Shown: positions 24,267-41,105 of the stretch, one piece after another
How positions within the stretch are numbered: position 1 is the stretch's first letter
How the letters are laid out: the number at the start of each line of letters is the position of its first letter
Assembly (NCBI GenBank): GCA_000708835.1
Contig: DF237436.1
Coordinates: 1 to 64,000, forward strand
Direction: 5' to 3'
DNA: 64,000 bases
Origin: Klebsormidium nitens
Taxonomy: Eukaryota; Plantae; Klebsormidiophyceae
Notes under the pieces: model-generated
The model's database searches: none
What the model was told of the DNA's origin: nothing
The model's input: only the letters and a program-made list of their open reading frames with translations
Position numbers and translations under genes: made by a program

Positions 24267-25191
24267 ATGATCAACTGAGACCACAATCACCAAGACTGCT
24301 TCCACTTGAGCACATCGTGTCACCACTGATTAGAGTGACACCCCAGGTCACTTTGCCTGGCGCAGAATTTCATCCTTGTCACAATATAAGCCGACTACGC
24401 AAAGCTGCGCGCGGCGGTATCTTGAACGTGCCGTTGCGGTCCGCCTGTTGAACACTCAACGGCAGTGCCCCCTACGATGTTCCAAGGTTCGCTAGCTTGC
24501 AGGCTACTGTAAGGACCAGAGACTCACGACGACTAGCCTGCCACCAATCTCAAGGTGAGATCATGATTTCATACAGAGGTACTCCTTACATGCCGCGCGC
24601 GTTGCATGTATACAGCTTGCCAAGTTGCTTTGAACACTTGGCACAATAAGTCAGTAATATATCGCATCGTTGTCCGGATGGCTATGCTTGATGCATCACT
24701 TAATCAGCGCGGCCTGCCGGGAGCACCGGCCATGATCCTTCGAAGGCCAATACAACTGCCCCGCGAGTCACGCACGGCCACCACGTGACTTCAGATCACC
24801 GATCGCGATGCAACTTAGCTCGGCCCCGCTGGATGCACTTAACAATTGCCTCGAGGGTTGTTATGTGTACAAGAACGTCTATGCGATATTGCTGCGAATC
24901 GAAAATTTGCAGCAATCGGTGTGTATGCTCGATAGACACGTGAAATGGACGGCCGGCAAGTACTCATCATTTACGGGTTCGACTGGACTCGCAATAAGTG
25001 GAACATTCTGCATATTCCGGTTTGTGCGTTCATTTATAGAGACATCTAACTCGTGAAGCGTCGAGCACGGCAGGACTGGTCGTCGACGCTGCGTGTAGAA
25101 AAGTTTCGAAGGTGCCACAAATGGCGCCGAAAGGAGGAGCGTACGCTCAGAAGAATAATTCCCGGTTCCGCCTGTCCACGACTGAACCGAC

Positions 25192-28100
25192 CTAGCCCGC
25201 GTGCTGGCCGGCGTCATCCTTGCTAAGCCGGAAGAACGCCTGCTGCAGAGTCGGTTGGCTCACAGAGTAGTCCTCTATCCCCAAGCTCGCCCGCTTCGTC
25301 TCCAATTCATGCAACAACATGGCCAGCTCCGGCAAGGTCTGGATCGGCACACCAAACCGCGCTTGGCCCCCCGAGTCGCTCTCCGAAGCAAAGCTGCGCG
25401 GGCCGCCGTTTTCGCGCCCGGACGACGTCGAGGGGGAGGGGAAGAGCGTGTTGATGAAGGTGCGTATAGCGGGCAGCTTGGAGGGATGCGCGCGCACGAT
25501 GAGCGAGTAGTCGCTGCCGTACTTTTTCTTGATGCTCTGGGGGGAGCCCAGGCATCGAAGCCGCCCCTTCACCAGAACGCCCACCTGGGTCCTGAGCAGC
25601 GGGCACGAGAAGCAGCAAATTGTGAGTAGAGGATCTTGGTACACACTGTCGCTTCGAAGAAATCCGCGAGAACAAGGCTAGAAGATCGAGAAAGACGAAA
25701 GGTGAGAAGGAAAACAAAACAAATCCCCGGCTTAACCAATGATTCTTTTGTTTTGAATAGTGTCAATATTTCCAATGTCGTAACTTGGCCATCAAAGTAG
25801 ATCGACGAAGGGGTGTAAAATAGAATTGCAAGCCATATATTCTTATGGAGAAGAGCGACGGAAGAGAGGGTCTTCATCACGTATGTCGAGTACATCCGTA
25901 GGAGAGGATACGGCATACGTCAGAGTAGCACCGATCAGACTCAGCCCTAGCATAATCACATGCAAAGGAGCATCCATTGGGCTCAGACTCTCTACTGCAG
26001 AGCTGCTAGATCTAGTCTGCCTTTGCACTTACCCCAGTGCTTCCGCTTCTTCGACCGAGCTGGTGCAGATGAGCGTCGCCCGCCCTGCGGAGCCAGCCTT
26101 GATCTGGGACCAGACGGCCTGCCGCCCTGCCGCATCCATGCCTGCGCGGACGCAAGAAACCTAGTTGAAGAGATCAGGGAGTAGCTTCCTAGCAGAAAAA
26201 CTGAGGTCTGCATTCGCAAAGACGTCGCAGGATTGCCTTGACCCTCGAGGGCCCCCATCAGCTAAATGAAGCCCTGGCAATACTAGTATTCAAACGAACG
26301 AAAGAACAGGATATCTTCTATACCGTCGGAATCAGAACGTGTGTTTGATTCGTCCAAGGTAAACGCTGTGGCCGCGATGTTTGGCAACCAGACCCACTGT
26401 TTGATTCGCAGCACGAGCAACTAGCAAAAAGCAAGGCGAACTAGCAGCTGGTTGGATTTGAGCGGACTCCCATCCAACTTCCAAAAATGTCAGTGCTTCA
26501 GGTCTCGAAGCAAACCGGATATTTTGAGCGCAGGCTTGAGCCCACTTAGTAGCTCAGCTCGGCCAGTTCGTTTTCTCACCGAACGTGGGCTCGTCCAACA
26601 ACAGCACTCGCGGGCCGCCTAGAAGCGCCATCGCCAGCTGGAGCTTCCTCAGCGTGCCAGGTGGCGCGTTGCGGGCCAGCTGCTTGGCTTCCTCGGCAGA
26701 AATCTCCGCAGACAGCAACGCCGAGTCGACTGCTAGAGAGCCCGACGCGGCGAGACCGCGCACGGTGCACAACATTTGGAGGTGCTCGCGTACAGTCATA
26801 GCTCCGGCCACCACCTGCGCAGGAGAACGAGACGCAGCTTTCGTCAATGCCTTCAGTTCATCCTTGTCCGGTGGCTTTCAATGACAAACCTATGTTACGC
26901 CGTAGATTGAGTGTTTCGGGTCCCCTTCATTCTCGAGGTTGTATCCTCCTGGCAAACAAACAAATCGAATCTGCGCAGAAATGCAGAAGCGCACTATTCA
27001 GCGGTCTGAAAATACTCTTGAGCGTCCTGTTTGCAGTCTTGGTATGTCTTCGTTCTCTACGTCTGCTGTTAGATGATCCACGTAAAACGTTCGGAACACC
27101 GTTCATGACCTGCTGTGACGAAGGACCATCGCACCGATGCACCTTGACTTTGCCCACTCTCCTCCTCCAATGGTGGTAGATTTAAACAATCGAATAACTC
27201 AAAAGACGACGCGCACCAGCTGGGTGCATTGCACTAGTGCTGAATGATCTCCAAAAAGCACCTGACCTTACTTTCGTGGCACCTTCATTCATCTCAGACC
27301 ACACGAAGCAGTTGATGTGAGAATCGACAATCCCTCCTGGCTCAATCTTGGCTCGATCTCGGCCGTCTCGATTTGTCCACGTTATTATCCTCAGACTGTT
27401 CGACTGGGTACTGTTATGGACGACACTACACGCGGCGGTCTCTGTGCGGGTAAAAGAAAGCGGAAGACACCAAAACCCGAAGAGACAACAAAGAAAAGAT
27501 CCTAGTACACGTGTCCTCACGTCTCCCTGCGGGCAGAAGCCGACCTTCCCCCCGTTCCCGAACTCGTAGCTGTAGCGCACGCTCTGGCCGCAGATGAGCG
27601 CGTCGCCGTGCGTCACCTCAGTGGTCCCCGCCAAGCAGCTCAGTAGCGTGCTCTTGCCCGCAGCCGCAGGGCCCACCAACACGATGGTCTGCACAGAAAT
27701 GGCGGCGGGGTCTGAATGCAACGGTCGTTTTTGTTTGGGAGCGCGGAAAAAAAGGGATCAATAACCTCACTGACTATCAACGTGATCTTTACGGGTTTGG
27801 ATTGGCCGTCTGAAGGCACCATCAGAGCGGCCTTTGTTAACGGAGGAGGATCCAATGACGTGCACTCTGGAGCTTAGGATGTCAAAGAAAAGAGGAACCG
27901 GTGCTGCCATTGACAGATCGACTGGTTCGTAGGATGGAGACGTCATGCGAGACTGAAGGTGGGTGCTCCACGCAAGCATTTACAATGGCTGCAACAAGAG
28001 AAGTGTGGGGAGTCTTATGACAAACGCGCTCTAGAACTTAAAAAGTTGGCTCAGAGACACAACTCAGCTCGAATCACTGACCTCTCCAGCCCCCACCGAC

Positions 28101-29515
28101 AGCCAGAAGTTCTGCAGCGCCACCACCGGGGGGGAGATCTCCGTGTCTTCCAAGACCGGTGGATATGTCTATGGGAAAACGACGAGGTCAGCACAGGAGA
28201 GGATCTCACCAGACCGAACCAGTCACCGCGCTTATCCTCCTTGCTCTGCGAGAGCACTTGTCTAAACTTGACACCTTTCGTTTCGCAGAACAGTCTCGGC
28301 TGTTACGAGGGACCCGCTGGCGGAGCTTTCGTTGTGGTGCACAAACACGCATGCAGATATCAACGAGTCTACCCAGCGAAAATTGTTTCATTATGCAAGC
28401 CGTGTCCCACGCTGGAACCTTCTTTAGACTATAACGACAGCGACTGGGAAACGACTTTTTTCCATGAAGTAATTGCACTAAACCCCATGGTTTCCAGCTC
28501 CACAATGCAGACCAGCATCTAACCTATTCCGACCCCCGTACCTTTCCCAGCCCATAGCACAGTGTGAGCGCGTCCTCCTGCTCCTGCACAGCCGTGTCGT
28601 TCTGCGCCAGCGTTTCCCACGCCGCGCCTTTCTGCACCACCTTCTGCTTCTCCGCCGCCACCTCCGGCTCTAATGGAGGCTCCGCGGCGGCGTCCGAGAG
28701 CTCGACCGGCGCTTCCTGCCGAGTCTCGGGCTCTGTAGCTTTCACCTCCAAGTGCCTGCGACGAAGACAGACCAATAGTATTATTGTTGACAAGTGAAAC
28801 GGGACTGAGCTGCTCTGGTGGAGATGTTTCGCGGTGATGGGATTCACGACTCATAATTGAGGGGTGCCCAACGCCCAGGTCAGCAGAGATTGTGTTTGGG
28901 TGACAGTCAAAGTCCGTTCAAAGAGAGCCGATCCGGCTCGCCGATCCGCTCTTGAAGCCCTTCCCGAACTCTCCTTAATACGCCCGATCCACTAACTTAT
29001 GAGAACGGTCGCGTTAAGAAGCAAATCGTCGTATCTGGAGCAGAAAATCGAACTTGTTGCGATGGAAACTCCAAGCTCGAAAAACGTACCACAGTCTCAG
29101 GGCGTAAAGCGCGGCTGCTGTGGTCAGCCCAAGCAGCGTAACCGGTATCTGCGTGTCCCACTGGAAGTACGCCCCCGCCGACACGCTGGCGGGCGGGCCC
29201 TCGCCGTTTTTGCCCGTCAGCCGTGCGTTGGTGTAGTTGATGAAGTGGTAGCCCGCAAGGAGCGCATACGGGGGATTGATGAACGACATGATCGTGTGGA
29301 AGGGGACGATCGACGAGGTGCCTGCGGAACGAAAAGAGGCGTGAACTTGGGGTGACATCGAGGCTCGACTACCGTTGTAGGTGTGGCTGTATGCTTGGAG
29401 CTGGAAAGTAGGTTCTGAGGTGCTTCTGTCATTTGTGGGCTTCGGACTTGATCCGGTGTGAGTTTGGTCTGATCAACATGGAGAAATCAAACAGCAGCAG
29501 AACGGCATCAGGATG

Positions 29516-29554
<39 letters not shown>

Positions 29555-32500
29555 GCCGACTCCAAATTTGAAAAGGGGAATGTCTCTAGTACGTCAGAGC
29601 AGACTTGCGTTTTAAATCCCGCTTGCGGGCTTTGGAATCTATCAGCAAGCGACTGTGAGCTGTGTGGTCACCGTCCCCGTCCATCGAGGTATTAAAAAAG
29701 ACAAACAAGAACCGGCTGAAACAGCAGAAACGGCTGAGCATTGGAAAGTGTAGATGGAAGCCCACATTCAAGAAAGACAACGCAAAAACGGCTGACGAGA
29801 AGTTGAAAAAGTTGACTAAGCGCGCGCACCGTCGGCCCAGATGGTGAGCATGAAGAAGTAGGGAATGACGGCGGCTGTGAAGAAGAGCACGGACAGGTTG
29901 GACGCCGCCGCGAGGCCATTGCGCGTGCCGAACGTCCAGACGTAGACCATCAGCAGCTGAGCCTTGGGCGCCAGCACGTTGAGCACGAACAGAACTAGCA
30001 TGGCGGGTTTCAGGAACGGCGTGCGCCCGAAGCAGGAGCCCAGGACGGTGATGAGCTGGTACGTGATGGCCATGAAGAGCGCGTCGCCCAGCCACGTGCC
30101 CAACCAGAAGGGGAAGCTGCGCAAGCCCGCCACGCGCAGCAGGGGGCGCAGCCCGATCTCGCGCTCCGAGACGACCTGCGGGAGGGGGGGAGTGTCAGGC
30201 TGAGCGCGAACTTAAAGAATGAGGCCGGGTAGAGTGAGTCACTGCCGTGCATGTCTAGCTTCGGACTGCATGCCACGATGCCAGACAATGGTTGAATAGG
30301 GGGGGCGAATAGAGGCGTCCTGAGATGTTGTTTGCTGTGTACTGAAAGAATGGGCGAGTCTATAATTGGCGAGTCTCTGATTGGGCTTGAGCAGAAACAC
30401 CGCAGTCGCCTTTGCGCTGACCATTGGAAGTAGCTTCTCGCACTGGCTCTTGTTGGAGATACAGACTCCTCTAAGATGTGAAGCGCGAAAGCGGGACGAA
30501 CGCGTCGGCTCTGATTGGGCTCGCATTTTGAAGGCAAGGCAACGTGACCGACTAACTTACCAGAACGACCTACACGAAGAGCTTCATCGTAGACTCTGTA
30601 AACGGGACAAGGCGTCGCTTCTAGACAACGAGTCTCCGAGAATTCTCAAAGCTCAGAGCAAGGCCTGGATATCGCAGTTTCATGGACACGACGAGTTCCC
30701 GAGTATTCCCAGATCTTAGAGCAAGGCAATATATTTCGCAGATTTATTTGAACATAAGTGTCGGCAACTACAAATCCGTTCCCTCACCTGCCCCCCTAGC
30801 TGCGGCGGGATCATGAGCGTGCTAAGGCACACGAACGCCCCAACGAAGTAGCCAAAGACGTACTCCGCATCCAGGTACGGCAACGCTTTGGACCACACCG
30901 AGAGCGTGGTCACCGCGCCGCTGACCAGATCGTTCATCGTTTCCAGAATCGCCGCGTCGAGCATGGAAGCCAGCGTCGGCAGCTGGTGCATCTGCCACGG
31001 TTGATAGAGTACCGTGTACTGGGCGGAACAACCGGGCAGGTCCAGGGCGTCGAACGAGACGGCAACGAAGTCGGAGGGATCCCCCGAGGCGGCCGAGGAG
31101 AGCGCGGCCGCGAGGGCGGCGGAGTCGTACTGCTGGATGTTGGGGCCGAACTTGCGCAAGACGGTCGTGACCTGAGGAGCAGCGGTTCGAACAGTCAGAT
31201 GGTCAAATGTGCCCTGCGCCGATTTTCGTTGTCACCACACTGCTTTCTGAGGTCTGCTTCGATCAAGCAACAGCCAAGTGCACCAGTTGATTGCATACAC
31301 CGTCTCACATGCGAGAAGTTCTTGGGGGGCTAACGACGAGGGAAAAATCAAAGAAGGACTCTCGTTTAGCTTTGCAACTTCCGTAGTGAGACGCAAAAAG
31401 CCGCATGTCACAGAGTACCTCAGATTCTCTCCGGACAGTCGCTGCACTAAACAGAAGGCTCTAGTGTGCTGGTTTTCAAACATAAAAGATGGATTGAACC
31501 CGCTTTGCGAAATGTGTGAAATTTTCGGTACGAAAAGCTTTGGTGGCACCACAAGATACATGTAGGTACACAAGTTCATTGCACATGCTACTGCCTGATA
31601 GCCATCCACGCAACCTTGAGGAGCTTCATCGTGCAAGACCGACCGCGAAATTGGTCCATACGAGGATGCAGAGACAGGTGTCCGCCTCCTGCTGACCTGA
31701 GACACGTTCTGTGCGCCATCTGGGGGTGAAAAGTAGATCGGGACGTCGTTGCCGTAAGCAGGGTTCACCAGGTGGACCGGGTCTTCCGCCGTGTCCTTGT
31801 ACGCGACTTGTACCAGAATGGCCACCAGCGTGAAGATCTGGCACAGAAATCGGAGAAAGTCTGTTGGAACCACGCTCGCTGCCTTCAGGTTTTGGGTCTC
31901 TCGTCGAAGTTTCTTTGGAATGGCATTCCGATTGCAGGATGCTGGGGCAAAAGATGGCAACTTTTGCTCTCCAGCATTTGGCCAGCCGTGATGACATCCC
32001 AGGATTGGCTGGAGCGCTGCATCAAAACGCCAGAAAAGCCAGCGGGAACGTAATTACTGCGGTATTTTCTGCGTAAGCGCCTGTTCACCTTCACTCACAG
32101 GCATCCCAGCGACCATAACATGTTTGCGGTGATTAGTAGCTCACGAATGAGATCCTTCATCAGTACTGAAACAATATCGGGGTCACCACCAGCACCTTTG
32201 ACCTATCTGCAGCATGCTGCATAAAGTCGCAGCCACTCACGAGCGCCATGCCGAGCGTGTTGAACAGCAGCCCGGGACTCCGCCGGTACGTCTTAACCCG
32301 CATCTTAACCACCGCCACAAACTGCTGCCGGAACGTGGCGCGCTTCCCTGCAGCGTCGGCGTCAAACCCGAGGTCGATCCGGTCGTCTGCACCGGAAGTT
32401 CCGTCCTCTTCGGCGGAATGGTGCAGCAGACTCTCATGCGTGGTGTCGTCATCGTCGGGCGGCGCACGGTGCGCGGCGGACTCGAGGAGGGGCGGCAGGG

Positions 32501-35500
32501 CGGCCGCTTCCTCCTCAGCTTCTCCTGGAGAGGTGGATTAAACAAGAGGGGCTAAACTGCATGTTCATAGGGCTGAAGACTTGAGCACTTCCTTTGTGCT
32601 TTGCAGGAACAGAGCTTGCTGATAGCAACATCGCGTTTGAGATCGACGAGGGGTTGTAGTTTGGAGCACGTGCACTGTTCTTCAGACGCAGAGGTCTGCC
32701 ATCCCGCGGTGCTCCTTGCCCGAAGGAGAACTCAAGCAGAGTCACCCCAGACCAGCACGAGGAGTCAACTGCAATAGTAAAACGGGTATTCACCGACCTT
32801 CAACGACCAAAACCGGAACGAAGAATACAACTCTATTGGCCGAATCGCTGTCTGTCAGCAATTGCCGTACCTGCAAATTGCATGAAGATCTCCTCGAGCG
32901 TGGTGGACTCGAGCGCGCCCCCCGCCACGCCCACTTGTTCCGCCCGCTCCGTCAGTTCCATCATCATAGAAGCAACTTCCGAGGACCTTCCGAGGGGTAA
33001 TCGGTAAGTGGCGTGGTCCCCCCTGGTTCCGGGGACGGGGATGGCCTCGGGAAGGGACGACTGGATCAGACCCAGAACGGAGGGGGCGTCGAACCTGTCG
33101 GTCTTTGTTACGTGGAGTAGATAAGAAAGACCTGCAGAAACAGGGGGAGTATTGTACCACACTGTGGCCAATGGAAGAGAGTGCCTGCGCATTGATTGCA
33201 TTGAATCGGGGGGTGTCGGGTGCAGGGTGATAGATTCCTGATTCCAGACTAAAGAGCGAGTCAATCTAACGAATACTTGTGGTTTCTGCTGAAGAAAACC
33301 AATGAGGCTGTGTAAGATGACCCAGCCTGCAGAAGCATCGAAAAGCAAGGCCGGACATGCCGACGGAGAAGGCGCAGCGATTTTGTACGAGGGGAAGCGA
33401 ACCGGAAAGCCCAGACTATTCACGGTCTTGCAACTTCGAGCGCACCGCCACCTTGCCGACCTTTTTCTTGATCGAGAGGCTCAGGGGGTTCAACGCTGTT
33501 GACGAGGAATCCAGGAAGAGCAAGCTTTAGTTGGAGCCCGAAAGATGGGGCCTCGCAAGCTTGTGCCCCCGTTCCCACCCAGGGCACAGTGCGGGGCTCA
33601 CCAAACTTGTTTTTGAGGAAGAGGCTGGAGCCGCAGCACTTGACGACGCCATGCGAGAGGATGGCCTTGCGGTCCGCCAGCACGTCCGCCTCCTCCATGC
33701 TGTCCGTAGTCACCACCACGCACTGCCCGCCCGCGCGACGCCGCAGGAGCGCCTCCCACACCTAGTCACGCACGATTATCGTCTTCATTTCGTGGAAACA
33801 TCTTATTTTGCTTGCTTCTCTCTGCTAAGCCAGTTTGATGGAGAATAGACAACGTCCTCCTCTCACCAATTTCAGTGACATCAAACAACGTTCAATACCA
33901 GCACTGACCGCCCGCTCATTGCCGCAGGAGCGCCTTTCACATCTGTGATGGCGCGGACAAAACACGTCCCGAAGCTTGCCTCGAGGTGCTGTCACGAGGC
34001 TCTGTGTCTCTGCCCCCAAATTAACCATCTGTCTGCACTTTCAACATGACTCTTTTGTATGGATGTCGTATATCCAGAGTTGCGGCCAGAAGCGACCTCT
34101 TAAACTAAGTCCGTGAGACAGGTGCAATGCAAGCTAAGACATCAATAGGAGATACATTGGGAGCTGTGCGTTATGTGCGCTCGACTGGCAACCAGCAGGA
34201 TGAATCTCAGGCACGCCTGATTTTGGGACGGCATCAGCAAGTCCAGGTGTTCAAGGGCCCTTCAAAGGGCCCCGAAGGCCACTCATTCTCTTATTCCAAC
34301 TCAATGAACAGAGCAGCCAAGTCAGGATACTAGCATCAGAGATGATACTGTATCTGTCCGGCACAAAGTCAGGACAGCCGTAGGGATCGAATCGACGCCT
34401 GCACAAGGATGCAAGTCTGCATCCTATTTATGCAGTGAAACACAACAAAACTCAGTGATAATAGCAACGCGGAGACCCATGAAAACGCCCCTTGATTAAA
34501 TGATTTGCAAATAAGAACTTTCGTGCATACCTGGCTTCTTGAAATCGCGTCCAAGCCCCTCGTCGGCTCATCCAGCACGACCACGTGCGGGTCTCCTACC
34601 AGCGCCAATGCGACCGTCAGCTTCCGACGCGCACTCTCGTCCAGTGTACGGGCCAAGTCGTCGCCGTTTGCAGCCATGCCTAGTTCGGCCAAAAGCGACT
34701 GAACGGTCTGGTCCACGTTGGGCGCGGGCGCGGTCGTACCGTCGGGGCCGGGAGCAGTGTGCGAGAGAGACGAGTTTTCGCCCTTGATGGTCGCGACGTA
34801 GACGAGCTGTTCGGCGGCGGTGAGGAAGCCCGAGTGGATGTTGCTTTGCGGGCACACGCCCAGGAGCGAGCCGCTGTGAAGGGCGGGGCCTGCAGAAAAA
34901 AGCCGGTAACGTCAGCATGGGGAAGAAGGGACACTGAACAACTTGAACAAGAAGGTGTTGTGGGGGATGTTAGCATGGCAATTGCTGTTTGCCTGTGGCG
35001 TGTCAGAATAAAGGGCGAAGAGGAAGCATAGCATATCTGCAAATGCCGAGCAACTCGTATTTGTGTACTGCCGTTTCTCTCCATCGCTTCTTTGTGCCCC
35101 AGAAATGGTCCCTCTGGCAAGACAAAGCGGTTTGCAGATTGCAGCGGAACATAGTGCTGGAGAGTTTCTCAAACTTTGGTAACATGCTCAGACTCAACCA
35201 TTGCTCGTCGACAAATTGGTCTGGGACAGAAGGCGGCAGACAGGAGGCACGACAAACGGGGCACGAGAAGCCAAGCAGATGTGCACACGGACAGCACGAC
35301 CACCTTGAATGTCTATGATCCAGAAGGAGGAGCAAGCGCCAAAGCAATCTAATAAGCACCGGCACGCAGGGCACGTCAATCTCACCCGCTTGCGATACCC
35401 TGTGGCTGTACACATACGCCTCCCCCGACGTGGGTCGCACCAGCCCCATCAGCATGCCCGCCACTGAGCTCTTTCCGCTTCCGGTGTGACCCAGGAACGC

Positions 35501-38500
35501 AAAGAGCTGCCCCTCGTACAGGCTCATCGTCAGGCCCTTGACCGCGACCGTCGGTTTGCTCGTTCGCTTTGCGCTGTCCCGTTGCCGATGGTATCCCCCG
35601 CCCCGCCCCCGCCCGAACGGCCACCATGACGTCAGCAGAGCGACCGAGCGGCCGATGAGGCCGTGCCGGCGAGGTGGGTATACTTTCCGGAGATTGGAGA
35701 AGACGATCGCAACCTTGCCGGCGAGAGAGGGTTCGACGGGCTCTTCGTCGGGGTTGTCCTCTCGGATCGCGATTTGGAGGTCGGACCCTGGGGAGAACGC
35801 AAGGGGCGCTTCTCAGAATCTTGCGATGAGCCTTCAGGTTCAGGGCGAGCTCTTTCTCTTGGTCGTGGTAAAACAGTTGACCTATACACTCAGTGTTTTG
35901 GGAGGAGGGGCGGTTTCGCTTGCCAAGGACAGTTCGGCGTGGACTAGAGTAGACTCCGCCGTCACTCCTCGAGCACAGCACATTCCGGAAGCATGCGCCG
36001 GCTGCCATGTTCATGGGGGCTCGACGTACTCATATGAATCCCCAATCCGGGCCGGCAAACATGACCAGCCTAAGGACCTTGTCTTAGAGCAAGGTTTGCA
36101 CAGCGCTCTCTTCCCAACTGCTGATCGTTTGTCCGAACTTCTCGGTCCGTTCAAACCCTGACATAAGAACAGAGTTTTAGGCGTCTCACGGGTTGCATCG
36201 TCCTCCCCGTCGTCCCCGTCTAGTTGCTCCAGCTCCACGACCCCCCCTTCCGTGTTGCGCCGGCTGCCCAGCCTCTGGTAGCCCTCCGGGGGGGGAGACC
36301 AGTAGGCTCGATCCAGCACGAAGCTCCAGGGCCGCTTGGCTCCCCGCCCCGGGTGTGGCCACACATTGTCCAGGTACCTGGTTGTGGGTCAACGTAAATC
36401 CTTTCATAGGACGGAGGCAGTTGGGGTCTGTCTGATGACGCGTTCTCGCTTTCTTGATGTTTCCCAAAATCTCGTTGCTGAAAATCGTCGGAAATGCTTT
36501 GATGGGTGGGAATTGCTCGTTTTCTTTCGTTTGTACTACATTCCCAAATCTAGGGAACAAGGAACCATGCATCTGAGAACTCTCGACCCCATGTGCTGCA
36601 GGCTAGCAATAACATGTCGACGTTCATCCCTGAACCATTTCGAAGAGCGAGATTCCGGAAAAACGGGCGGATCTTTCGTGCAACTCGACTGCCATCAGCC
36701 CTCCACGACAAAAGGCGCCGTGACTAGCAAAGAACAAGCTGTACGCATCTTGGGAGCATGCAGAGGGAAACAAGCAGTCTCCAGCCTGCCGCTCACCAGG
36801 CCAGAAGCAAGTACAGAATCGTGTCCGTCACGATGAGGCAGAGCGCCCCGCCCACGCTGAGTGGGTGCATCGGATCGCCCGGGTCGTTCCCCACCGTTCG
36901 CGAGAAGAGGAATCCCCCGTGAATGCCGTCCCCGCTGCCCTCCGCGATCACAGTGGTGTCAATGGCCAGCACGAAAGCGACCGGGGAGAAAAGGGCCAGG
37001 ATGCCGCAGACGCCGGACGGCAGGTTGAAGAGGTCAATCGGGAAGATAGCCAGGCTGCCGAGCACCATGAGCAAAAAGCCGGCCGCGGAGGCGGAGCGAG
37101 CCTGGGGGGAGCGCAAGAGCGACAAACTTGGTTTCTGTTACCCTTACATGTTGATTGTGCTTCACAGACTGCTTTGTCTCGACTTTCGTGACAAATGAAC
37201 ACTTCGGAGCGGTTGCTTCGAAAAGCGACAGAGATGGAGAAAGTCAGTCGTTTTGACATGCGCTTACAAGAAGGCAGGAACAAATGTCCGTCGAGACGGC
37301 AAGCAAACAGATCGTGACCAAGCGACTTTTCCCCCAACGCCGCATTCAAAATGAGAACTTTCTAAGACAGCCGCGCAGCTCACCTTGGTAAAGACCGCGC
37401 TGAGGGCGAGGCCGAGGGCGACCAAGGAGAGCAGGAAGAGATACACCAGCAGGAACATGAGCGCTACGCTGGAGGCCTCGAATAGGGCGGTCGCCCATGC
37501 AATGGCCACCTTGCAGGCGGTAGAAACAGGCGGTTGGATATACGGACCGAAAATGGTCGAGAAAGCCGTCCTAAACAGAGAGATCCAAAGGTCGAGACAG
37601 CCTGAACCGCAGGCTGCCCGGGCGGAGAAGGGGGTCAAGCAGATGTAGTGCCACGTCTTACTACTCACGTCGATGCAGCAATTGGTAGTCGAGACTGAAA
37701 TCAGAGGAAGATGAGAATACTTGACGAACTGCAGAAGCAAAGGAAGCACTCGAAACAAATGGCAGAGATGGCAAGCCTTCTGCAATGTCAGGGTGGCAGC
37801 TTCTCGCTCACCACAACCGCTGTGGTGATGGCAGCTGTGACTGCGAACGTGAGCAGCCAGGCTAGCCAGTAGACGGACTCGATGAGGCCCATTTGCAGCA
37901 GGCAATCCTGGGCAGACAACATGCACGGAACCGATGAGATCCACCTTGGTGAGGTAACATGGCTGTGGAGGCTGGATGACTCCCTGTGAGAATTGATGCT
38001 GAAGTCAAGACTGCTTGGTGAGTTCGCTTCTCGAGTCGACGGCCTGCCAGGTCAGAACGCTAACCCTGACACAGTCAACAATTGTCGTAGTCAATCCCTT
38101 CAAACGTAATGCACGTTGCCTCCGAGAGAATGCTGAATGACTGCCGCTTCTAACCTAGTTCGACTTGTCTTTCCGAAGGCTGCTTATTACTTGGTCGAGC
38201 AGTGACAATCTGACTTTGGCTGCAGCTTGCAGGTTCCTCATGTCAGCCGATGGCTGCTGTGCCCCACCTTGATGAGTGCGTCCTTTTCGTGGACGATTTC
38301 GCTGGCGACACTCTGGAGGACGGGAGCAAGGGCCCACACCATGTACATGGCGGCAAACAAACGGAACCGGACCTGGAAGACCATCGAGGAGAATGGTCAG
38401 CCTCTGGCCGAGGCCGTGTACCTACCGTTGGATTCCAGCGTTCTTAGGTATCACACGGTCAAGCTGCGGCACGTGGCATGATCTGAACTCGACGAACATT

Positions 38501-41105
38501 ATCGCCCTGGCATAAACTGAACTCGACAGCATCCTTCGCTAGACCCGCTGGATAGGGAGGAAGCACAATAAGAGAGCCAGAGAGCTTTTTGGGATCAAAC
38601 GGCCATGACATCTGACGCATGCGAGGCGGGCAGCTAGCTGCGACATGGAGAGCTTTGCAATGTCCCGTTCACGTGCCCTACCTCCAAACCTTGATTTGCG
38701 TCAATTTCGAAGGTCGGATCGGTCCCCTGATGCAGATAGTCAGAACAGAGGCAGAGTGCGGAAACTCACAGATGCGAACCCCTTGTCATAGGGCGGCAGC
38801 GGCCTTTGTTGTGCGTGCATGTGTCCCAAGCCCGCTCCCGCTGCCCCACACGACTCGGGCAGCTCGGCGGCCGCAAGAGCGTGGGCCACAGCCCCTTCCA
38901 GAGCTAGCAGACCTGTCACACGGAAGGCCTGATGAACTTTCAGGGGCTCTGGAAACCTTCGAAGCTTTCAGGGATACATCTTTCGTCCAGATTATCAACT
39001 CAATAGAGAGCTCCGTCTAGACGGAGCTGGAGGGTCAATTCAGCGATCGAAGAGAATGAACGTTCCAAGCAGCTTCGAGTCGCTAGTTGTCTATTGATCC
39101 TTCACATAAAGTTTACGAAGGCTTTACCAGGAACGGGGAATTTCAGAAGAGGCTTCTCTGAAGGCCGGCAATCTCTTGAACCCGTCTATCCTGACACTTT
39201 TGAATGGTGATGCAATTTAATATGAGCGAATCCAAGGCCAACGAAGCATCAGACATGCTGCGACAAAGCATCACAGAGATTGGTGGGGTCTCACCTGACG
39301 TCAGATACTTTTGTGTGGGGCACGCGGTGGGGAACTGATAGCTGCCTGCATCTGGTGCACGGCATGAGGACTTGTCTACCGGTGAGTCGTTGTCATTTGA
39401 AGAAGGAAGGTAGGAGCCGTTGATCCTGATTGTGTACTCAATGTCTGATGGCAGTGCGGTAGCCTGCTCAGGTATGTTGAAGACCAGGCCGGCATAGACC
39501 GTCTGCATAGGAAGCCCAAAAACATAAGGGCAATGGGTATTGTGGTTGGTGGCTGCATTGGATACCTGCCTGGAAGTCTAAACTTTGGAAACCCCAACAG
39601 GTTGACTTCCCCCTTAATCTGGGCTGAGTCAGGCTTATGATCTGTCACCCAAGTCTGTCTTGCGTCTATTGCAATTTGCGGGCCGCTCTTATGATTGAGA
39701 GTCTGATCTACAGCCAAAGGTCTCATAGTACAAGGATCGAAACAAAGTCTTTGCAGTGCTTAGATTGAAAAGCGCCCTTACCCCAGCATTCTGGTTATAT
39801 GCTGTGACGAGCTCGGCTTCCGTCGCATACCCTCTAACGGTCAGCGTCGGAAGGCCGGGATAGGTGGCTTCCAGAAAGTTTGCGGCACCCTGGACGACGG
39901 TCTGAATCGCCGCCCCCGGAGGAACAAAGCCGAGCTGCATCATGCAACACAATTTTCTCGCTCTTCAGTTGCTACCACGATGAGTATGTAACAAGTCTAA
40001 TGATGCATAAGACCCTGGCCGCTAGGCGACACTCTTGCGCTGGGAATGTTAGAAGAGTACACCATACAGACTTCCATCATTTAACAGCAGATGACCATTA
40101 AAGTGTCGGTCAACTGTCAACCAGGACCTTTGAAGACTTTGAAGTTTTTGGTTCAACTTCTGTTGGAATGGAGACCTGGCATGAGTCAGAATTGGCTACT
40201 GCCACCTACCACTGTCTCTTCATAGGAGCGGTCAGCCAGCTCCCAGCATGCACTGCCACTCCCGTCCAGATTGTTGCACACAGCGTCAGTGATTGGCTGG
40301 CTGGGGAGCGCGGGCAAATTTAGCACTGGCTGCACCACCTTCATGAACACCAGCAGCAGCAATATGTACATCTGCGCAGAAAGTAAGCTTATTTCATCAT
40401 AGCCAGGCAGCTCCCAATCCATCTATTCCAACCCAGACTTGGACTCGATGTTGGCCCGGGGACACTCCCCAGAGATCAGCATCAACCCAAGAACTTGTCG
40501 AAATGATCAGTGCCAGCAAGGTGGATGAACTTCCGAGGATAAGGGGCATTGATGAGAATGACTAGATGGGGGAAAGCGTTCCCCTCTGCCATTCAGAAAA
40601 GTATAGCTTAACAGTAGGCAAATGGTGAAGGCAGTGGATTGTAGTTCCATCTTAACAATGGCACCCCCAGCTCGTCACCATGACAGCTGGCCGATGTCAC
40701 ATGCCACAAACTCTGCATTTGCCAGAACCACATTGGCTCCTGGGGAAGGACATTAAAGGAAGAAGTAGACATGACTCATGCCTGAAGTGTTCTTGCAGAA
40801 TTGCCAAACACTCAGGACCAGGGATGCAGATGATGCAACAAAAGCGGGCTGGTGGAAGAAAGTAGTCAGTGAGCACAGGTTAGGAGACGCTTCAAGTGGT
40901 GAAGTCTCATGCAGAATGAACCTCAATTGGGGCAAACAAAAGCAACCAAATGAGGCAGTGCCCTGGCTACTTTATCGGTGTTGCACGGATTAGTACCACT
41001 CACGGGCAGAAAGATTTCCTGCAACGTCCTCCCCCCATCACGCGTCTTGATCCTCCAATTGCGGAGCAGCGTGGCCTGCATTTGGACATGCCATGGAGCA
41101 GCCAT
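25192..41105 (-). CDS. ABCA: Full-size ABCA-subfamily transporter (TMD-NBD-TMD-NBD), ~1789 aa, 25 exons, both NBDs degenerate
   Basis: Exons (minus): 41004-41105, 40210-40371, 39782-39934, 39295-39502, 38770-38912, 38268-38372, 37812-37907, 37384-37509, 36797-37101, 36190-36377, 35386-35787, 34531-34889, 33602-33761, 32871-33131, 32241-32524, 31697-31837, 30788-31171, 29830-30175, 29090-29321, 28542-28755, 28082-28168, 27521-27688, 26580-26814, 26033-26141, 25192-25591; total 5370 nt, no frame break. ABCA hallmarks: QMQATLLRNWRIKTR..RTLQEIFLP, IVHEK...IK, WYLDNVWP, Walker A GHTGSGKS / GPAAAGKS, CPQ Q-loops, LDEPT Walker B/D-loops, GSSLFLKNKFG, TTLEEIF, LGSPQSIKKKYG, QPTLQQAF. Confidence 0.95.
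29518..29553. repeat. (CT)18 microsatellite in an ABCA intron
   Basis: Uninterrupted ctctct run of 36 nt. Confidence 0.97.

What the first reader, a model, noticed from the sequence alone, without database searches (positions are those of the whole stretch)
26033..35787. Intact full-size ABCA with both signature motifs and both H-switch histidines lost: a candidate pseudo-ATPase transporter
NBD1: Walker A GHTGSGKS and Walker B VVLDE are intact, but the signature is LDESARRKL (34619-34645; ABCA consensus LSGGMKRKL) and the H-loop is VTTDSMEE (His to Asp, ~33700-33710). NBD2: Walker A is GPAAAGKS (conserved Gly to Ala), the signature is NAPPGTLRKL (consensus YSGGNKRKL) and the H-loop is ICTSSVEE (His to Ser, ~26055-26070). 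Known asymmetric ABC proteins (CFTR, SUR, TAP) degrade one composite site; here both sites lack both elements. Yet 25 exons and 1789 codons are uninterrupted and both TMDs, ectodomains and regulatory motifs are retained, which argues for selection on a non-hydrolytic role (lipid/nucleotide sensor, scaffold, or passive conduit).
Basis: partly seen in the sequence, partly recalled or inferred. Interest (0 to 1): 0.78.

Follow-up and report, generated by a model that had tools for sequence, protein, structure and literature searches.

The report
Ancient plant-lineage ABCA with dead ATP sites
This alga's gene for a full-size ABCA membrane transporter has lost the hallmark ATP-splitting motifs in both of its engines. 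The gene is expressed, strongly conserved and shared with stoneworts, liverworts, a moss and conifers, so it marks an old, undescribed protein family that probably binds ATP without the normal pumping cycle.

Summary
A 25-exon minus-strand gene (ATG 41105, stop 25194-25192, 1781 codons in my model) encodes a full-size ABCA. Alignment to ABCA1/3/4/7 shows both signature motifs lost: LDESARRKL for LSGGxxRKL, and NAPPGTLRKL for YSGGNKRKL. Both H-loop histidines are replaced (Asp, Ser). It is not a decaying copy:
- Spliced RNA contigs of 5.1-5.7 kb from four studies show eight exact GT..AG joints.
- Two close relatives from metagenomes conserve only the 25 exons.
- dN/dS is 0.08-0.09, also in the NBD exons.

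The degeneracy is ancient. Every member of a monophyletic streptophyte clade lacks SGG in both signatures. The clade holds Chlorokybus, Klebsormidium, Chara, Mesotaenium, Closterium, liverworts including MpABC51, the moss Ceratodon, and Cryptomeria. In 100 next-best ABCA relatives, SGG, the catalytic Glu and the H-loop His are nearly invariant.

Within the clade, the residues that bind nucleotide are invariant or mostly kept. The residues needed only for hydrolysis were lost differently in different lineages. The best reading is a protein that binds nucleotide but is poor at or incapable of hydrolysis. This is unproven, and the invariant NBD2 Walker B Glu leaves room for slow catalysis. I found no paper describing the clade. 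The scan noted this same stretch once before (s1-305646).

The parts
25192..41105 (-). Whole gene: full-size ABCA (TMD1-NBD1-R1-TMD2-NBD2-R2), 25 exons, 1781 codons plus stop
   Evidence: tblastn of clade proteins. 25 exon-only conserved blocks against L003. The in-script frame check found no internal stop and all introns GT..AG.
41004..41105 (-). Exon 1 (ATG at 41105; N-terminus MAAPW...)
36797..40371 (-). Exons 2-9 (ECD1 and TMD1): 40371-40213, 39934-39782, 39502-39295, 38912-38770, 38372-38268, 37907-37812, 37509-37384, 37101-36797
   Evidence: Boundaries come from conservation with L003 plus GT..AG and reading frame. I have no RNA joints here. The exon 2 donor at 40213 is the least certain.
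36190..36377 (-). Exon 10
35386..35787 (-). Exon 11: NBD1 A-loop, clade-specific WW insertion, Walker A
   Evidence: Pfam ABC_tran 5.9e-08
35552..35677 (-). Insertion of 42 residues with a WW motif between the A-loop Tyr (NLRKVY, 35678-35695) and the strand before Walker A. It is present in the whole clade and absent from canonical ABCAs.
35468..35491 (-). NBD1 Walker A GHTGSGKS (P-loop Gly, Lys and Ser intact)
34531..34889 (-). Exon 12: NBD1 Q-loop (CPQ, within 34843-34860), degenerate signature, Walker B, D-loop TRGLD (34549-34563)
34618..34644 (-). NBD1 signature position: LDESARRKL instead of LSGGxxRKL
   Evidence: phmmer alignment to ABCA4/ABCA7; clade table
34561..34584 (-). NBD1 Walker B VVVLDEPT (Asp and Glu kept in this species)
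33602..33761 (-). Exon 13: NBD1 H-loop region
33690..33713 (-). NBD1 H-loop VTTDSMEE (His replaced by Asp)
   Evidence: alignment to ABCA3 TTHFMDEAD
30788..33131 (-). Exons 14-17 (R1 domain, linker, start of TMD2 and ECD2): 33131-32871, 32524-32241, 31837-31697, 31150-30788
   Evidence: The 3' end of exon 17 is fixed by an RNA joint.
28082..30175 (-). Exons 18-21 (TMD2, linker, NBD2 A-loop): 30175-29830, 29321-29090, 28755-28542, 28168-28082
   Evidence: RNA joints in four runs; GT..AG
27521..27688 (-). Exon 22: NBD2 Walker A and Q-loop (CPQ, within 27524-27541)
27650..27673 (-). NBD2 Walker A GPAAAGKS
26580..26814 (-). Exon 23: NBD2 degenerate signature and Walker B
26641..26670 (-). NBD2 signature position: NAPPGTLRKL instead of (N/T)YSGGNKRKL
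   Evidence: alignment to ABCA1
26584..26607 (-). NBD2 Walker B VLLLDEPT (Asp-Glu invariant in the whole clade)
26033..26141 (-). Exon 24: NBD2 D-loop (FG|MD) and H-loop
26047..26070 (-). NBD2 H-loop ICTSSVEE (His replaced by Ser)
   Evidence: alignment to ABCA3 ITSHSMEE
25192..25591 (-). Exon 25: end of NBD2 and the C-terminal ABCA regulatory (R) domain; stop TAG at 25194-25192
   Evidence: Pfam R1_ABCA1 26.5 bits against a cut-off of 27

Best explanation
This is a functional, expressed member of an old streptophyte-specific subfamily of full-size ABCA proteins. The subfamily is a paralogue of the canonical plant full-size ABCAs and lies nearest to the animal ABCA5-like group. Its common ancestor had already lost the SGG core of the signature motif and the D-loop Ser in both NBDs.

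Shown:
- The gene is intact, spliced, transcribed and under strong purifying selection, including its NBD exons.
- The degeneracy is shared by every clade member found.
- Residues that hold nucleotide and Mg are invariant: Walker A Gly/Lys/Ser-Thr and Walker B Asp in both NBDs. The A-loop aromatic and the Q-loop are mostly kept.
- Residues needed only for catalysis or for ATP-driven closure of the dimer drift freely or were lost independently in different lineages:
  - NBD1 Walker B Glu became Gln or His in land plants.
  - NBD1 H-loop His became Asp, Glu, Gln or Ser.
  - NBD2 H-loop His became Gln in land plants and Ser in Klebsormidium.
  - Q-loop Gln became Lys or Glu in some members.

Inferred mechanism:
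- Each NBD still binds ATP at its P-loop.
- The canonical ATP sandwich (P-loop of one NBD against the signature of the other) and the hydrolytic power stroke no longer operate.
- In Klebsormidium both sites look dead. At the NBD2-based site, the partner signature Ser is Asp and the H-loop is Ser.
- The NBDs, tied together by the ABCA regulatory domains, would then serve as a nucleotide-occupied structural or allosteric module. The membrane and luminal domains would do an energy-independent job such as lipid binding, passive lipid movement, or regulating a partner.
- This resembles how CFTR site 1 or SUR uses nucleotide as a ligand rather than as fuel.
For: - Motif substitutions are shown by alignment to solved ABCAs.
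- Expression and splicing: 20 runs from 7 studies hold the exon share of the words. Spliced contigs of 5.1-5.7 kb carry 8 GT..AG joints and no base differences in 4 runs.
- Intact ORF: 25 exons, 1781 codons, no stop.
- Exon-only conservation with relatives L001, L002 and L003.
- dN/dS is 0.088 for window against L003. For L001 against L003 it is 0.080, with unsaturated dS of 0.18. The NBD exons give 0.106 and 0.086.
- The clade was identified with a query that does not contain any motif, the C-terminal exon. Members were named.
- All 14 distant members and both close relatives lack SGG in both signatures. Binding residues are invariant and catalytic residues variable.
- 100 next-best relatives are almost invariantly canonical.
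- The clade is monophyletic (SH-aLRT 100) and its topology follows streptophyte phylogeny.
- No hidden canonical alternative exon lies in the introns.
- Review PMC7756269: in human full-length ABC proteins the degenerate site is always NBS1 alone.
Against: - No biochemistry. Loss of hydrolysis is read from sequence only.
- The NBD2 Walker B Asp-Glu is invariant in all 16 sequences. The NBD2 Q-loop Gln is kept in all members except the L001/L003 relatives. The NBD1 signature keeps its Ser in 11 of 14 distant members. The algal members Closterium, Mesotaenium, Chara and Chlorokybus keep the NBD2 H-loop His. The NBD2-based site may therefore still hydrolyse slowly in part of the clade.
- Some signature Gly substitutions in other ABC proteins only weaken activity (my own knowledge).
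- The proposed membrane function is speculation. Nothing in the data says what is bound or moved.
- The tree is a quick LG+G4 search, and the stem of the clade is long (0.66).
Confidence: 0.6

Rival explanations
1. It is still an ATP-driven pump with one very degenerate site (NBD1 P-loop with NBD2 signature) and one weakened but working site (NBD2 P-loop, Walker B Glu, Q-loop, with the altered NBD1 signature). This would be an extreme form of the usual NBS1-degenerate asymmetry.
For: - The NBD2 Walker B Asp-Glu is invariant in all clade members, and the NBD2 Q-loop is almost invariant.
- The NBD1 signature Ser is kept in 11 of 14 distant members.
- The NBD2 H-loop His is kept in Chara, Closterium, Mesotaenium and Chlorokybus.
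- The NBS1 pattern (NBD2 signature, NBD1 Walker B Glu and NBD1 H-loop changed) is exactly the known pattern of degenerate sites (PMC7756269).
Against: - In Klebsormidium the partner signature Ser is Asp (Asn in L001/L003), and the NBD2 H-loop is Ser. The relatives also changed the NBD2 Q-loop Gln to Glu.
- In land plants the NBD2 H-loop is Gln.
- The two signature positions that are Gly-Gly in canonical ABCAs vary freely in the clade. That is not expected if the loop still contacts the gamma-phosphate.
- The D-loop Ser is lost in both NBDs.
Confidence: 0.33
2. It is a young, decaying pseudogene or redundant copy whose motifs are drifting.
For: Only the motif losses themselves.
Against: - No stop or frameshift in 1781 codons.
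- Correctly spliced mRNA in four studies.
- dN/dS of 0.08-0.09 in two independent comparisons.
- Only exons are conserved against relatives.
- The same degeneracy in a clade reaching from Chlorokybus to conifers.
Confidence: 0.01
3. It is an artefact of the gene model: the real transcript uses other, canonical exons (for example mutually exclusive twin exons, which this genome is noted to have), or the reading frame was misassigned.
For: Other notes on this genome report twin exons in transporter genes.
Against: - RNA joints connect exactly the exons that carry the NBD2 motifs.
- tblastn with six canonical and clade ABCAs finds nothing better than E=0.8 outside the 25 exons.
- Orthologous loci and 14 annotated or transcript-derived proteins from other species carry the same substitutions.
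Confidence: 0.01

Closest known systems
Full-size ABCA transporters of known structure (human ABCA1, ABCA3, ABCA4, ABCA7)
   Same: They are the best solved-structure matches for every NBD exon. The forward TMD-NBD-TMD-NBD order is the same. An ABCA-type regulatory domain follows NBD2. The ABC2_membrane_3 and ACT_13 Pfam domains are on the clade proteins.
   Different: Both signature motifs, both D-loop Ser residues and both H-loop His residues are replaced. NBD1 carries a 42-residue WW insertion. Identity to these proteins is low; the Marchantia clade member is about 25-30% identical to its nearest non-clade relatives.
ABC proteins with one degenerate nucleotide-binding site (CFTR, SUR1/2, MRP1, TAP1/2, ABCB11, ABCG5/G8, yeast Pdr5, TM287/288)
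   Same: The site built on NBD1 shows the classical degenerate pattern: NBD2 signature changed, NBD1 Walker B Glu and H-loop changed in many members. Nucleotide probably stays bound as a ligand.
   Different: Those proteins keep one consensus site that hydrolyses ATP. The review PMC7756269 states that in human full-length proteins only NBS1 is degenerate. Here the second site has also lost its signature GG core, and in Klebsormidium and land plants its H-loop His too.
Animal ABCA5-like group (ABCA5/6/8/9/10)
   Same: It is the nearest non-streptophyte relatives by score (551 bits and below) and by tree.
   Different: The ABCA5-like proteins are canonical: SGG (rarely SAG) in both signatures, and the Walker B Glu and H-loop His invariant. 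The score gap is large (1039 bits against 551).
Plant full-size ABCA of the AtABCA1/AOH type, and canonical full-size ABCAs of Riccia (P0019) and Mesostigma (P0020)
   Same: Full-size ABCAs of the green lineage. Riccia sorocarpa carries both kinds.
   Different: They sit in a different part of the tree and have canonical motifs. The plant ABC surveys I read describe only this type as the full-size plant ABCA (PMC9164057).

Membership tests
ABCA subfamily (full-size) | Two ABC_tran nucleotide-binding domains in the forward order TMD-NBD-TMD-NBD | tested here: met
   Pfam ABC_tran on exons 11 and 22 is above the cut-off; on exons 12 and 23 it is just below. Collinear tblastn with full-length ABCAs runs from residue 1 to the C-terminus.
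ABCA subfamily (full-size) | Closest solved relatives are ABCA proteins rather than other ABC subfamilies | tested here: met
   ABCA1/3/4/7 top every PDB search, with E-values from 1e-22 to 6e-06. Other subfamilies are far weaker.
ABCA subfamily (full-size) | ABCA-type regulatory (R/ACT-like) domain after the NBDs | tested here: inconclusive
   R1_ABCA1 scores 26.5 bits against a cut-off of 27 on the last exon. PF26955 is listed for the clade proteins.
ABCA subfamily (full-size) | Membrane domains of the ABC2_membrane_3 type with large luminal domains after TM1 and TM7 | tested here: inconclusive
   Single exons gave no Pfam hit. However, all exons align to clade proteins that carry PF12698. 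No topology prediction was run.
Catalytically competent ABC ATPase | LSGGQ-type signature in each NBD | tested here: not met
   DES and PPG stand in place of SGG. The same loss is in all clade members.
Catalytically competent ABC ATPase | H-loop histidine in each NBD | tested here: not met
   Asp in NBD1 and Ser in NBD2.
Catalytically competent ABC ATPase | Walker A GxxxxGK[ST] and Walker B hhhhDE | tested here: met
   GHTGSGKS with VVVLDE, and GPAAAGKS with VLLLDE.
Catalytically competent ABC ATPase | Measured ATP hydrolysis | not testable with these tools
   Needs purified protein.
ABC transporters with a single degenerate site (CFTR/SUR/MRP/TAP/Pdr5 type) | One degenerate site (NBS1) paired with one consensus site (NBS2) | tested here: not met
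   NBS1 is degenerate. NBS2 also lacks the signature core and the H-loop His in this species.
AtABCA1/AOH-type plant full-size ABCA | Groups with AtABCA1-type sequences in a tree | tested here: not met
   The clade is separate (SH-aLRT 100) and sits with the ABCA5-like group. The Impatiens ABCA1 scores only 465 bits against the Marchantia member. The window gene itself was placed exon by exon, not in the tree.
Pseudogene | Disrupted frame, relaxed selection, or no transcript | tested here: not met
   No stops, dN/dS of 0.08-0.09, spliced RNA.

The most novel reading that the evidence does not exclude
A family of full-size ABC 'transporters', retained from the earliest streptophyte algae to conifers, works without ATP hydrolysis at either site. 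Nucleotide serves only as a bound ligand, or is not needed at all. The ABCA membrane and luminal scaffold does a non-pumping job such as lipid sensing, passive lipid transfer or regulating a partner. This would be the first ABC transporter fold shown to be kept by selection with both catalytic sites dead.
Probability: 0.45. Interest if true: 0.85.

Novelty: new variant of a known kind. Interest (0 to 1): 0.7.

Why it matters
Current models of ABC transporters need at least one consensus ATP site. All well-studied asymmetric members (CFTR, SUR, MRP, TAP, Pdr5) keep one.

A family that has lacked both signature motifs since the base of the streptophytes, and whose catalytic residues then eroded differently in different lineages while the rest of the protein stayed under strong constraint, is a natural experiment. 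It asks what the ABCA fold can do without the power stroke.

The question is directly testable, because Marchantia polymorpha, a tractable genetic model, has a member (MpABC51).

The result also corrects plant ABC inventories. Those describe only the AtABCA1 type as the full-size plant ABCA, and one survey states that early land plants lack full-size ABCAs (PMC9164057).

Tried and rejected
- Pseudogene reading: rejected by the intact frame, the spliced RNA and the low dN/dS.
- Hidden canonical or mutually exclusive exons in the introns: searched with six ABCA proteins. Nothing outside the 25 exons scored better than E=0.8.
- AtABCA1/AOH identity: rejected by score gap and tree.
- Pfam on single TMD or ECD exons gave nothing because the pieces are too short.
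- The first tree run, with the mixture model, did not finish. The LG+G4 quick tree was used instead.
- A brute-force search over all splice combinations timed out. It was replaced by junction-by-junction choice using conservation blocks.
- A look-up of an L001 called product failed because that call starts at GTG. I walked upstream with an ATG-start product of L002 instead.
- The window's own protein did not appear in either protein search, so I had no protein id for it.
- The joined 25-exon protein was sent to no search or folding tool. All searches were done exon by exon by reference. The joined reading was used only inside one local script, to count codons and check for stops.
- No AlphaFold model was made. 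The tool returns confidence only, and without coordinates it could not settle the geometry of the NBD dimer.
- Literature searches for a both-sites-degenerate ABC transporter, for this clade and for MpABC51 found nothing relevant.
- The species name Klebsormidium nitens comes from other notes of this scan. I did not verify it. It is consistent with the streptophyte identity of the relatives.

Full report
**What is there.** The finding lies in a minus-strand, multi-exon eukaryotic gene.
- Stop-to-stop reading of the minus strand shows ABCA-like pieces from an N-terminus (MAAPW..., near 41105) to a C-terminal exon ending at a TAG at 25194-25192.
- Pfam finds ABC_tran on the exons with the two Walker A motifs, and a near-threshold ABCA regulatory-domain match on the last exon.
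It therefore covers NBD1 through the NBD2 H-loop, not the whole gene.
- Other notes of this scan name the genome as Klebsormidium nitens. I did not verify that. The gene's relatives are all streptophytes, which fits.

**The observation.** Each NBD exon was searched by reference against solved structures. The best matches are always ABCA1, ABCA3, ABCA4 and ABCA7, and the alignments place the odd residues opposite the canonical motifs:
- LDESARRKL against LSGGMQRKL.
- NAPPGTLRKL against NYSGGNKRKL.
- VVVTTDSMEEAD against IVLTTHFMDEAD.
- LICTSSVEEAEAL against IIITSHSMEECEAL.

Both Walker A motifs keep the P-loop Gly, Lys and Ser. Both Walker B motifs keep Asp-Glu. Both Q-loops are CPQ. Both D-loops have lost their Ser (TRGLD, TFGMD). 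In 100 next-best ABCA relatives, the SGG core, the Walker B Glu and the H-loop His are almost invariant, so the pattern is not chance.

**Gene model and expression.**
- Twenty public runs from seven studies hold 0.23-0.49 of the sampled words of 25100-31000, which is about the exon share of that stretch.
- Contigs of four runs from four studies were laid on the stretch. They are 5.1-5.7 kb long and identical in sequence, and they skip eight introns. All eight introns are GT..AG on the minus strand.
- These joints connect exactly the exons that carry the NBD2 Walker A, signature, Walker B and H-loop.
- For the 5' half I used an orthologous locus. blastn of the gene region against L003 gives 25 conserved blocks and nothing in the introns. 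Splice sites chosen at the block edges give 25 exons, all GT..AG, 5343 nt, 1781 codons and no internal stop.
The codon count differs by eight.
- tblastn with six ABCA proteins finds no other NBD-like exon hidden in the introns.

**Selection.** L001 and L002/L003 are contigs of 53 kb and 46 kb from two JGI metagenomes. They carry the orthologue in two close relatives of the window's organism, which differ from each other by 13-18% in nucleotides, introns included. Exon-wise Nei-Gojobori estimates:

| Comparison | Codons | dN | dS | dN/dS | NBD exons only |
|---|---|---|---|---|---|
| Window vs L003 | 1765 | 0.111 | 1.26 (saturated) | 0.088 | 0.106 |
| L001 vs L003 | 1241 | 0.015 | 0.18 | 0.080 | 0.086 |

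The relatives keep the degeneracy and add to it:
- NBD1 signature: LNESARRKL.
- NBD1 H-loop: TTDSMDEAD.
- NBD2 Walker A: GPEHAGKS.
- NBD2 Q-loop: CPE.
- NBD2 signature: NSSVGTLRKL.
- NBD2 H-loop: CSSSVEEAE.

**Wider relatives.** I searched 1.84 billion representative proteins with the C-terminal exon, which contains none of the motifs.
- The best full-length hits come from Mesotaenium, Chara braunii, Marchantia (the cluster holds MpABC51), Closterium, Chlorokybus and an unnamed transcriptome. There is also a Welwitschia fragment.
- A word search with the Marchantia protein added Riccia (two species), Calypogeia, the moss Ceratodon, the conifer Cryptomeria and more Closterium.
- After these, the score falls from 1039 to 551 bits, to animal ABCA5-like proteins. 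An AtABCA1-type protein scores 465.
- No angiosperm, fern, lycophyte or hornwort member appeared. That is suggestive of loss but is not proof.
- Every exon of the window gene hits clade members first.
- A quick LG+G4 tree of 49 proteins recovers the clade with SH-aLRT 100. Its internal order follows streptophyte phylogeny: Chlorokybus first, then Chara, Mesotaenium and Closterium, then moss, conifers and liverworts. The clade sits beside the ABCA5-like group, away from the AtABCA1 type and from the canonical full-size ABCAs of Riccia and Mesostigma.
- Riccia sorocarpa has both a canonical full-size ABCA and a clade member, so the two are paralogues.

**Motif pattern across the clade.**
- Invariant in 14 distant members and both close relatives: Walker A G, G, K and S/T in both NBDs; Walker B Asp in both; the D-loop Asp; the RKL that follows each signature; and the NBD2 Walker B Glu.
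- Lost in all: the SGG core of both signatures. In NBD1, the two positions that are Gly-Gly in canonical ABCAs read P/A/K/L/E and S/P/A. The NBD2 core is equally variable.
- Lost in all except one NBD1 (Chlorokybus): the D-loop Ser.
- Lost in some lineages only, and differently in each:
  - NBD1 Walker B Glu is Gln in liverworts, moss and conifers and His in Calypogeia. The algae keep Glu.
  - NBD1 H-loop is Asp, Glu, Gln, Ser or His.
  - NBD2 H-loop is His in four algal lineages, Gln in land plants and Ser in Klebsormidium.
  - NBD1 Q-loop Gln is Lys in conifers and Glu in Chara.
- The clade also shares a 20-70 residue insertion with a WW motif between the A-loop and Walker A of NBD1.

**Interpretation.** Binding residues are frozen. 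Catalytic and dimer-closing residues are either free to vary or were lost independently. This is what is expected if, at the base of the clade, ATP hydrolysis stopped being required while nucleotide binding and the rest of the protein stayed essential.
- The site built on NBD1 looks like a classical degenerate site. A review of degenerate sites states that in human full-length ABC proteins only NBS1 is ever degenerate, and that the NBD2 signature is always changed there (PMC7756269).
- What is new here is that the second site has also lost its signature core. In land plants and Klebsormidium it has lost the H-loop His as well.
- In Klebsormidium the partner signature even carries Asp (Asn in the relatives) where the gamma-phosphate-contacting Ser should be.
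- I therefore favour a protein that binds nucleotide but is poor at or incapable of hydrolysis. I take that to be a structural or allosteric use of ATP on an ABCA scaffold.
- The main rival, at about one in three, is a slow pump that still uses the NBD2-based site. Its Walker B Glu is invariant, and its Q-loop is nearly so.
- Pseudogene and gene-model artefact are excluded.

**Novelty.** Two surveys of plant ABC families do not describe this clade. One says that AtABCA1 is the only full-size plant ABCA type and that early land plants lack full-size ABCAs (PMC9164057; PMC10513242). MpABC51 appears in no paper of the library. Searches for an ABC transporter with both sites degenerate found only single-site cases. 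The library is not complete, so this is absence of evidence. I class the finding as a new variant of a known kind.

**Limits.**
- There is no biochemistry.
- The 5' exon boundaries rest on conservation and splice rules.
- The tree is a quick search.
- The joined protein model was searched or folded with no tool. It was used only in a local script for the frame check.
- The same stretch was noted once before by this scan in an overlapping window (s1-305646).

Noticed in passing
window 35552-35677 (exon 11); the same position in all clade proteins: There is a clade-specific insertion with a conserved WW motif (WWPFGRGRGG here, WWQFWDIEGGRG in liverworts). It lies between the A-loop and Walker A of NBD1 and is absent from canonical ABCAs. 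Its length ranges from about 20 residues to about 70 in Closterium. Its function is unknown.
   Followed up: partly
window 33762-34530 (intron 12) against L001 1253-1781 and L003 9034-9562: This 769-nt intron between the NBD1 Walker B exon and the H-loop exon is absent in both close relatives, where the two exons are contiguous. This is an intron gain or loss between closely related algae.
   Followed up: partly
window 25592-26032 (last intron); also 26126-26373, 28203-28497, 28788-29070: Low-depth contigs run unspliced through introns: depth about 10-13 against about 50-125 for the spliced contigs, and 2-5 at the other places. The last intron is retained in all four runs. This could be pre-mRNA, some intron retention or traces of genomic DNA.
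   Followed up: no
window about 29476-29561 (intron 18): A (GA)n/(CT)n microsatellite reads as (RE)n or (SL)n in translation. The reads tool skipped 29510-29561 as a repeat.
   Followed up: no
L001 14205-20024; L002 14047-20227: Downstream of the orthologue, both relatives carry a WLM/PUB-domain gene and XAF1/TRAFD1-type zinc-finger genes in the same order. Whether the window below 25000 has the same neighbours was not checked. blastn found no conserved DNA outside the ABCA exons in 23000-44000.
   Followed up: no
protein searches: No protein identical to the window's gene product came back from either large protein search, although the species' proteome is public according to the papers read. 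The public model of this gene may be missing, split or different.
   Followed up: no
P0019 and P0177 (Riccia sorocarpa); P0006/P0170 (Marchantia): Liverworts have full-size ABCA genes, and Riccia has both a canonical and a degenerate one. This contradicts the statement in PMC9164057 that early land plants lack full-size ABCAs.
   Followed up: partly
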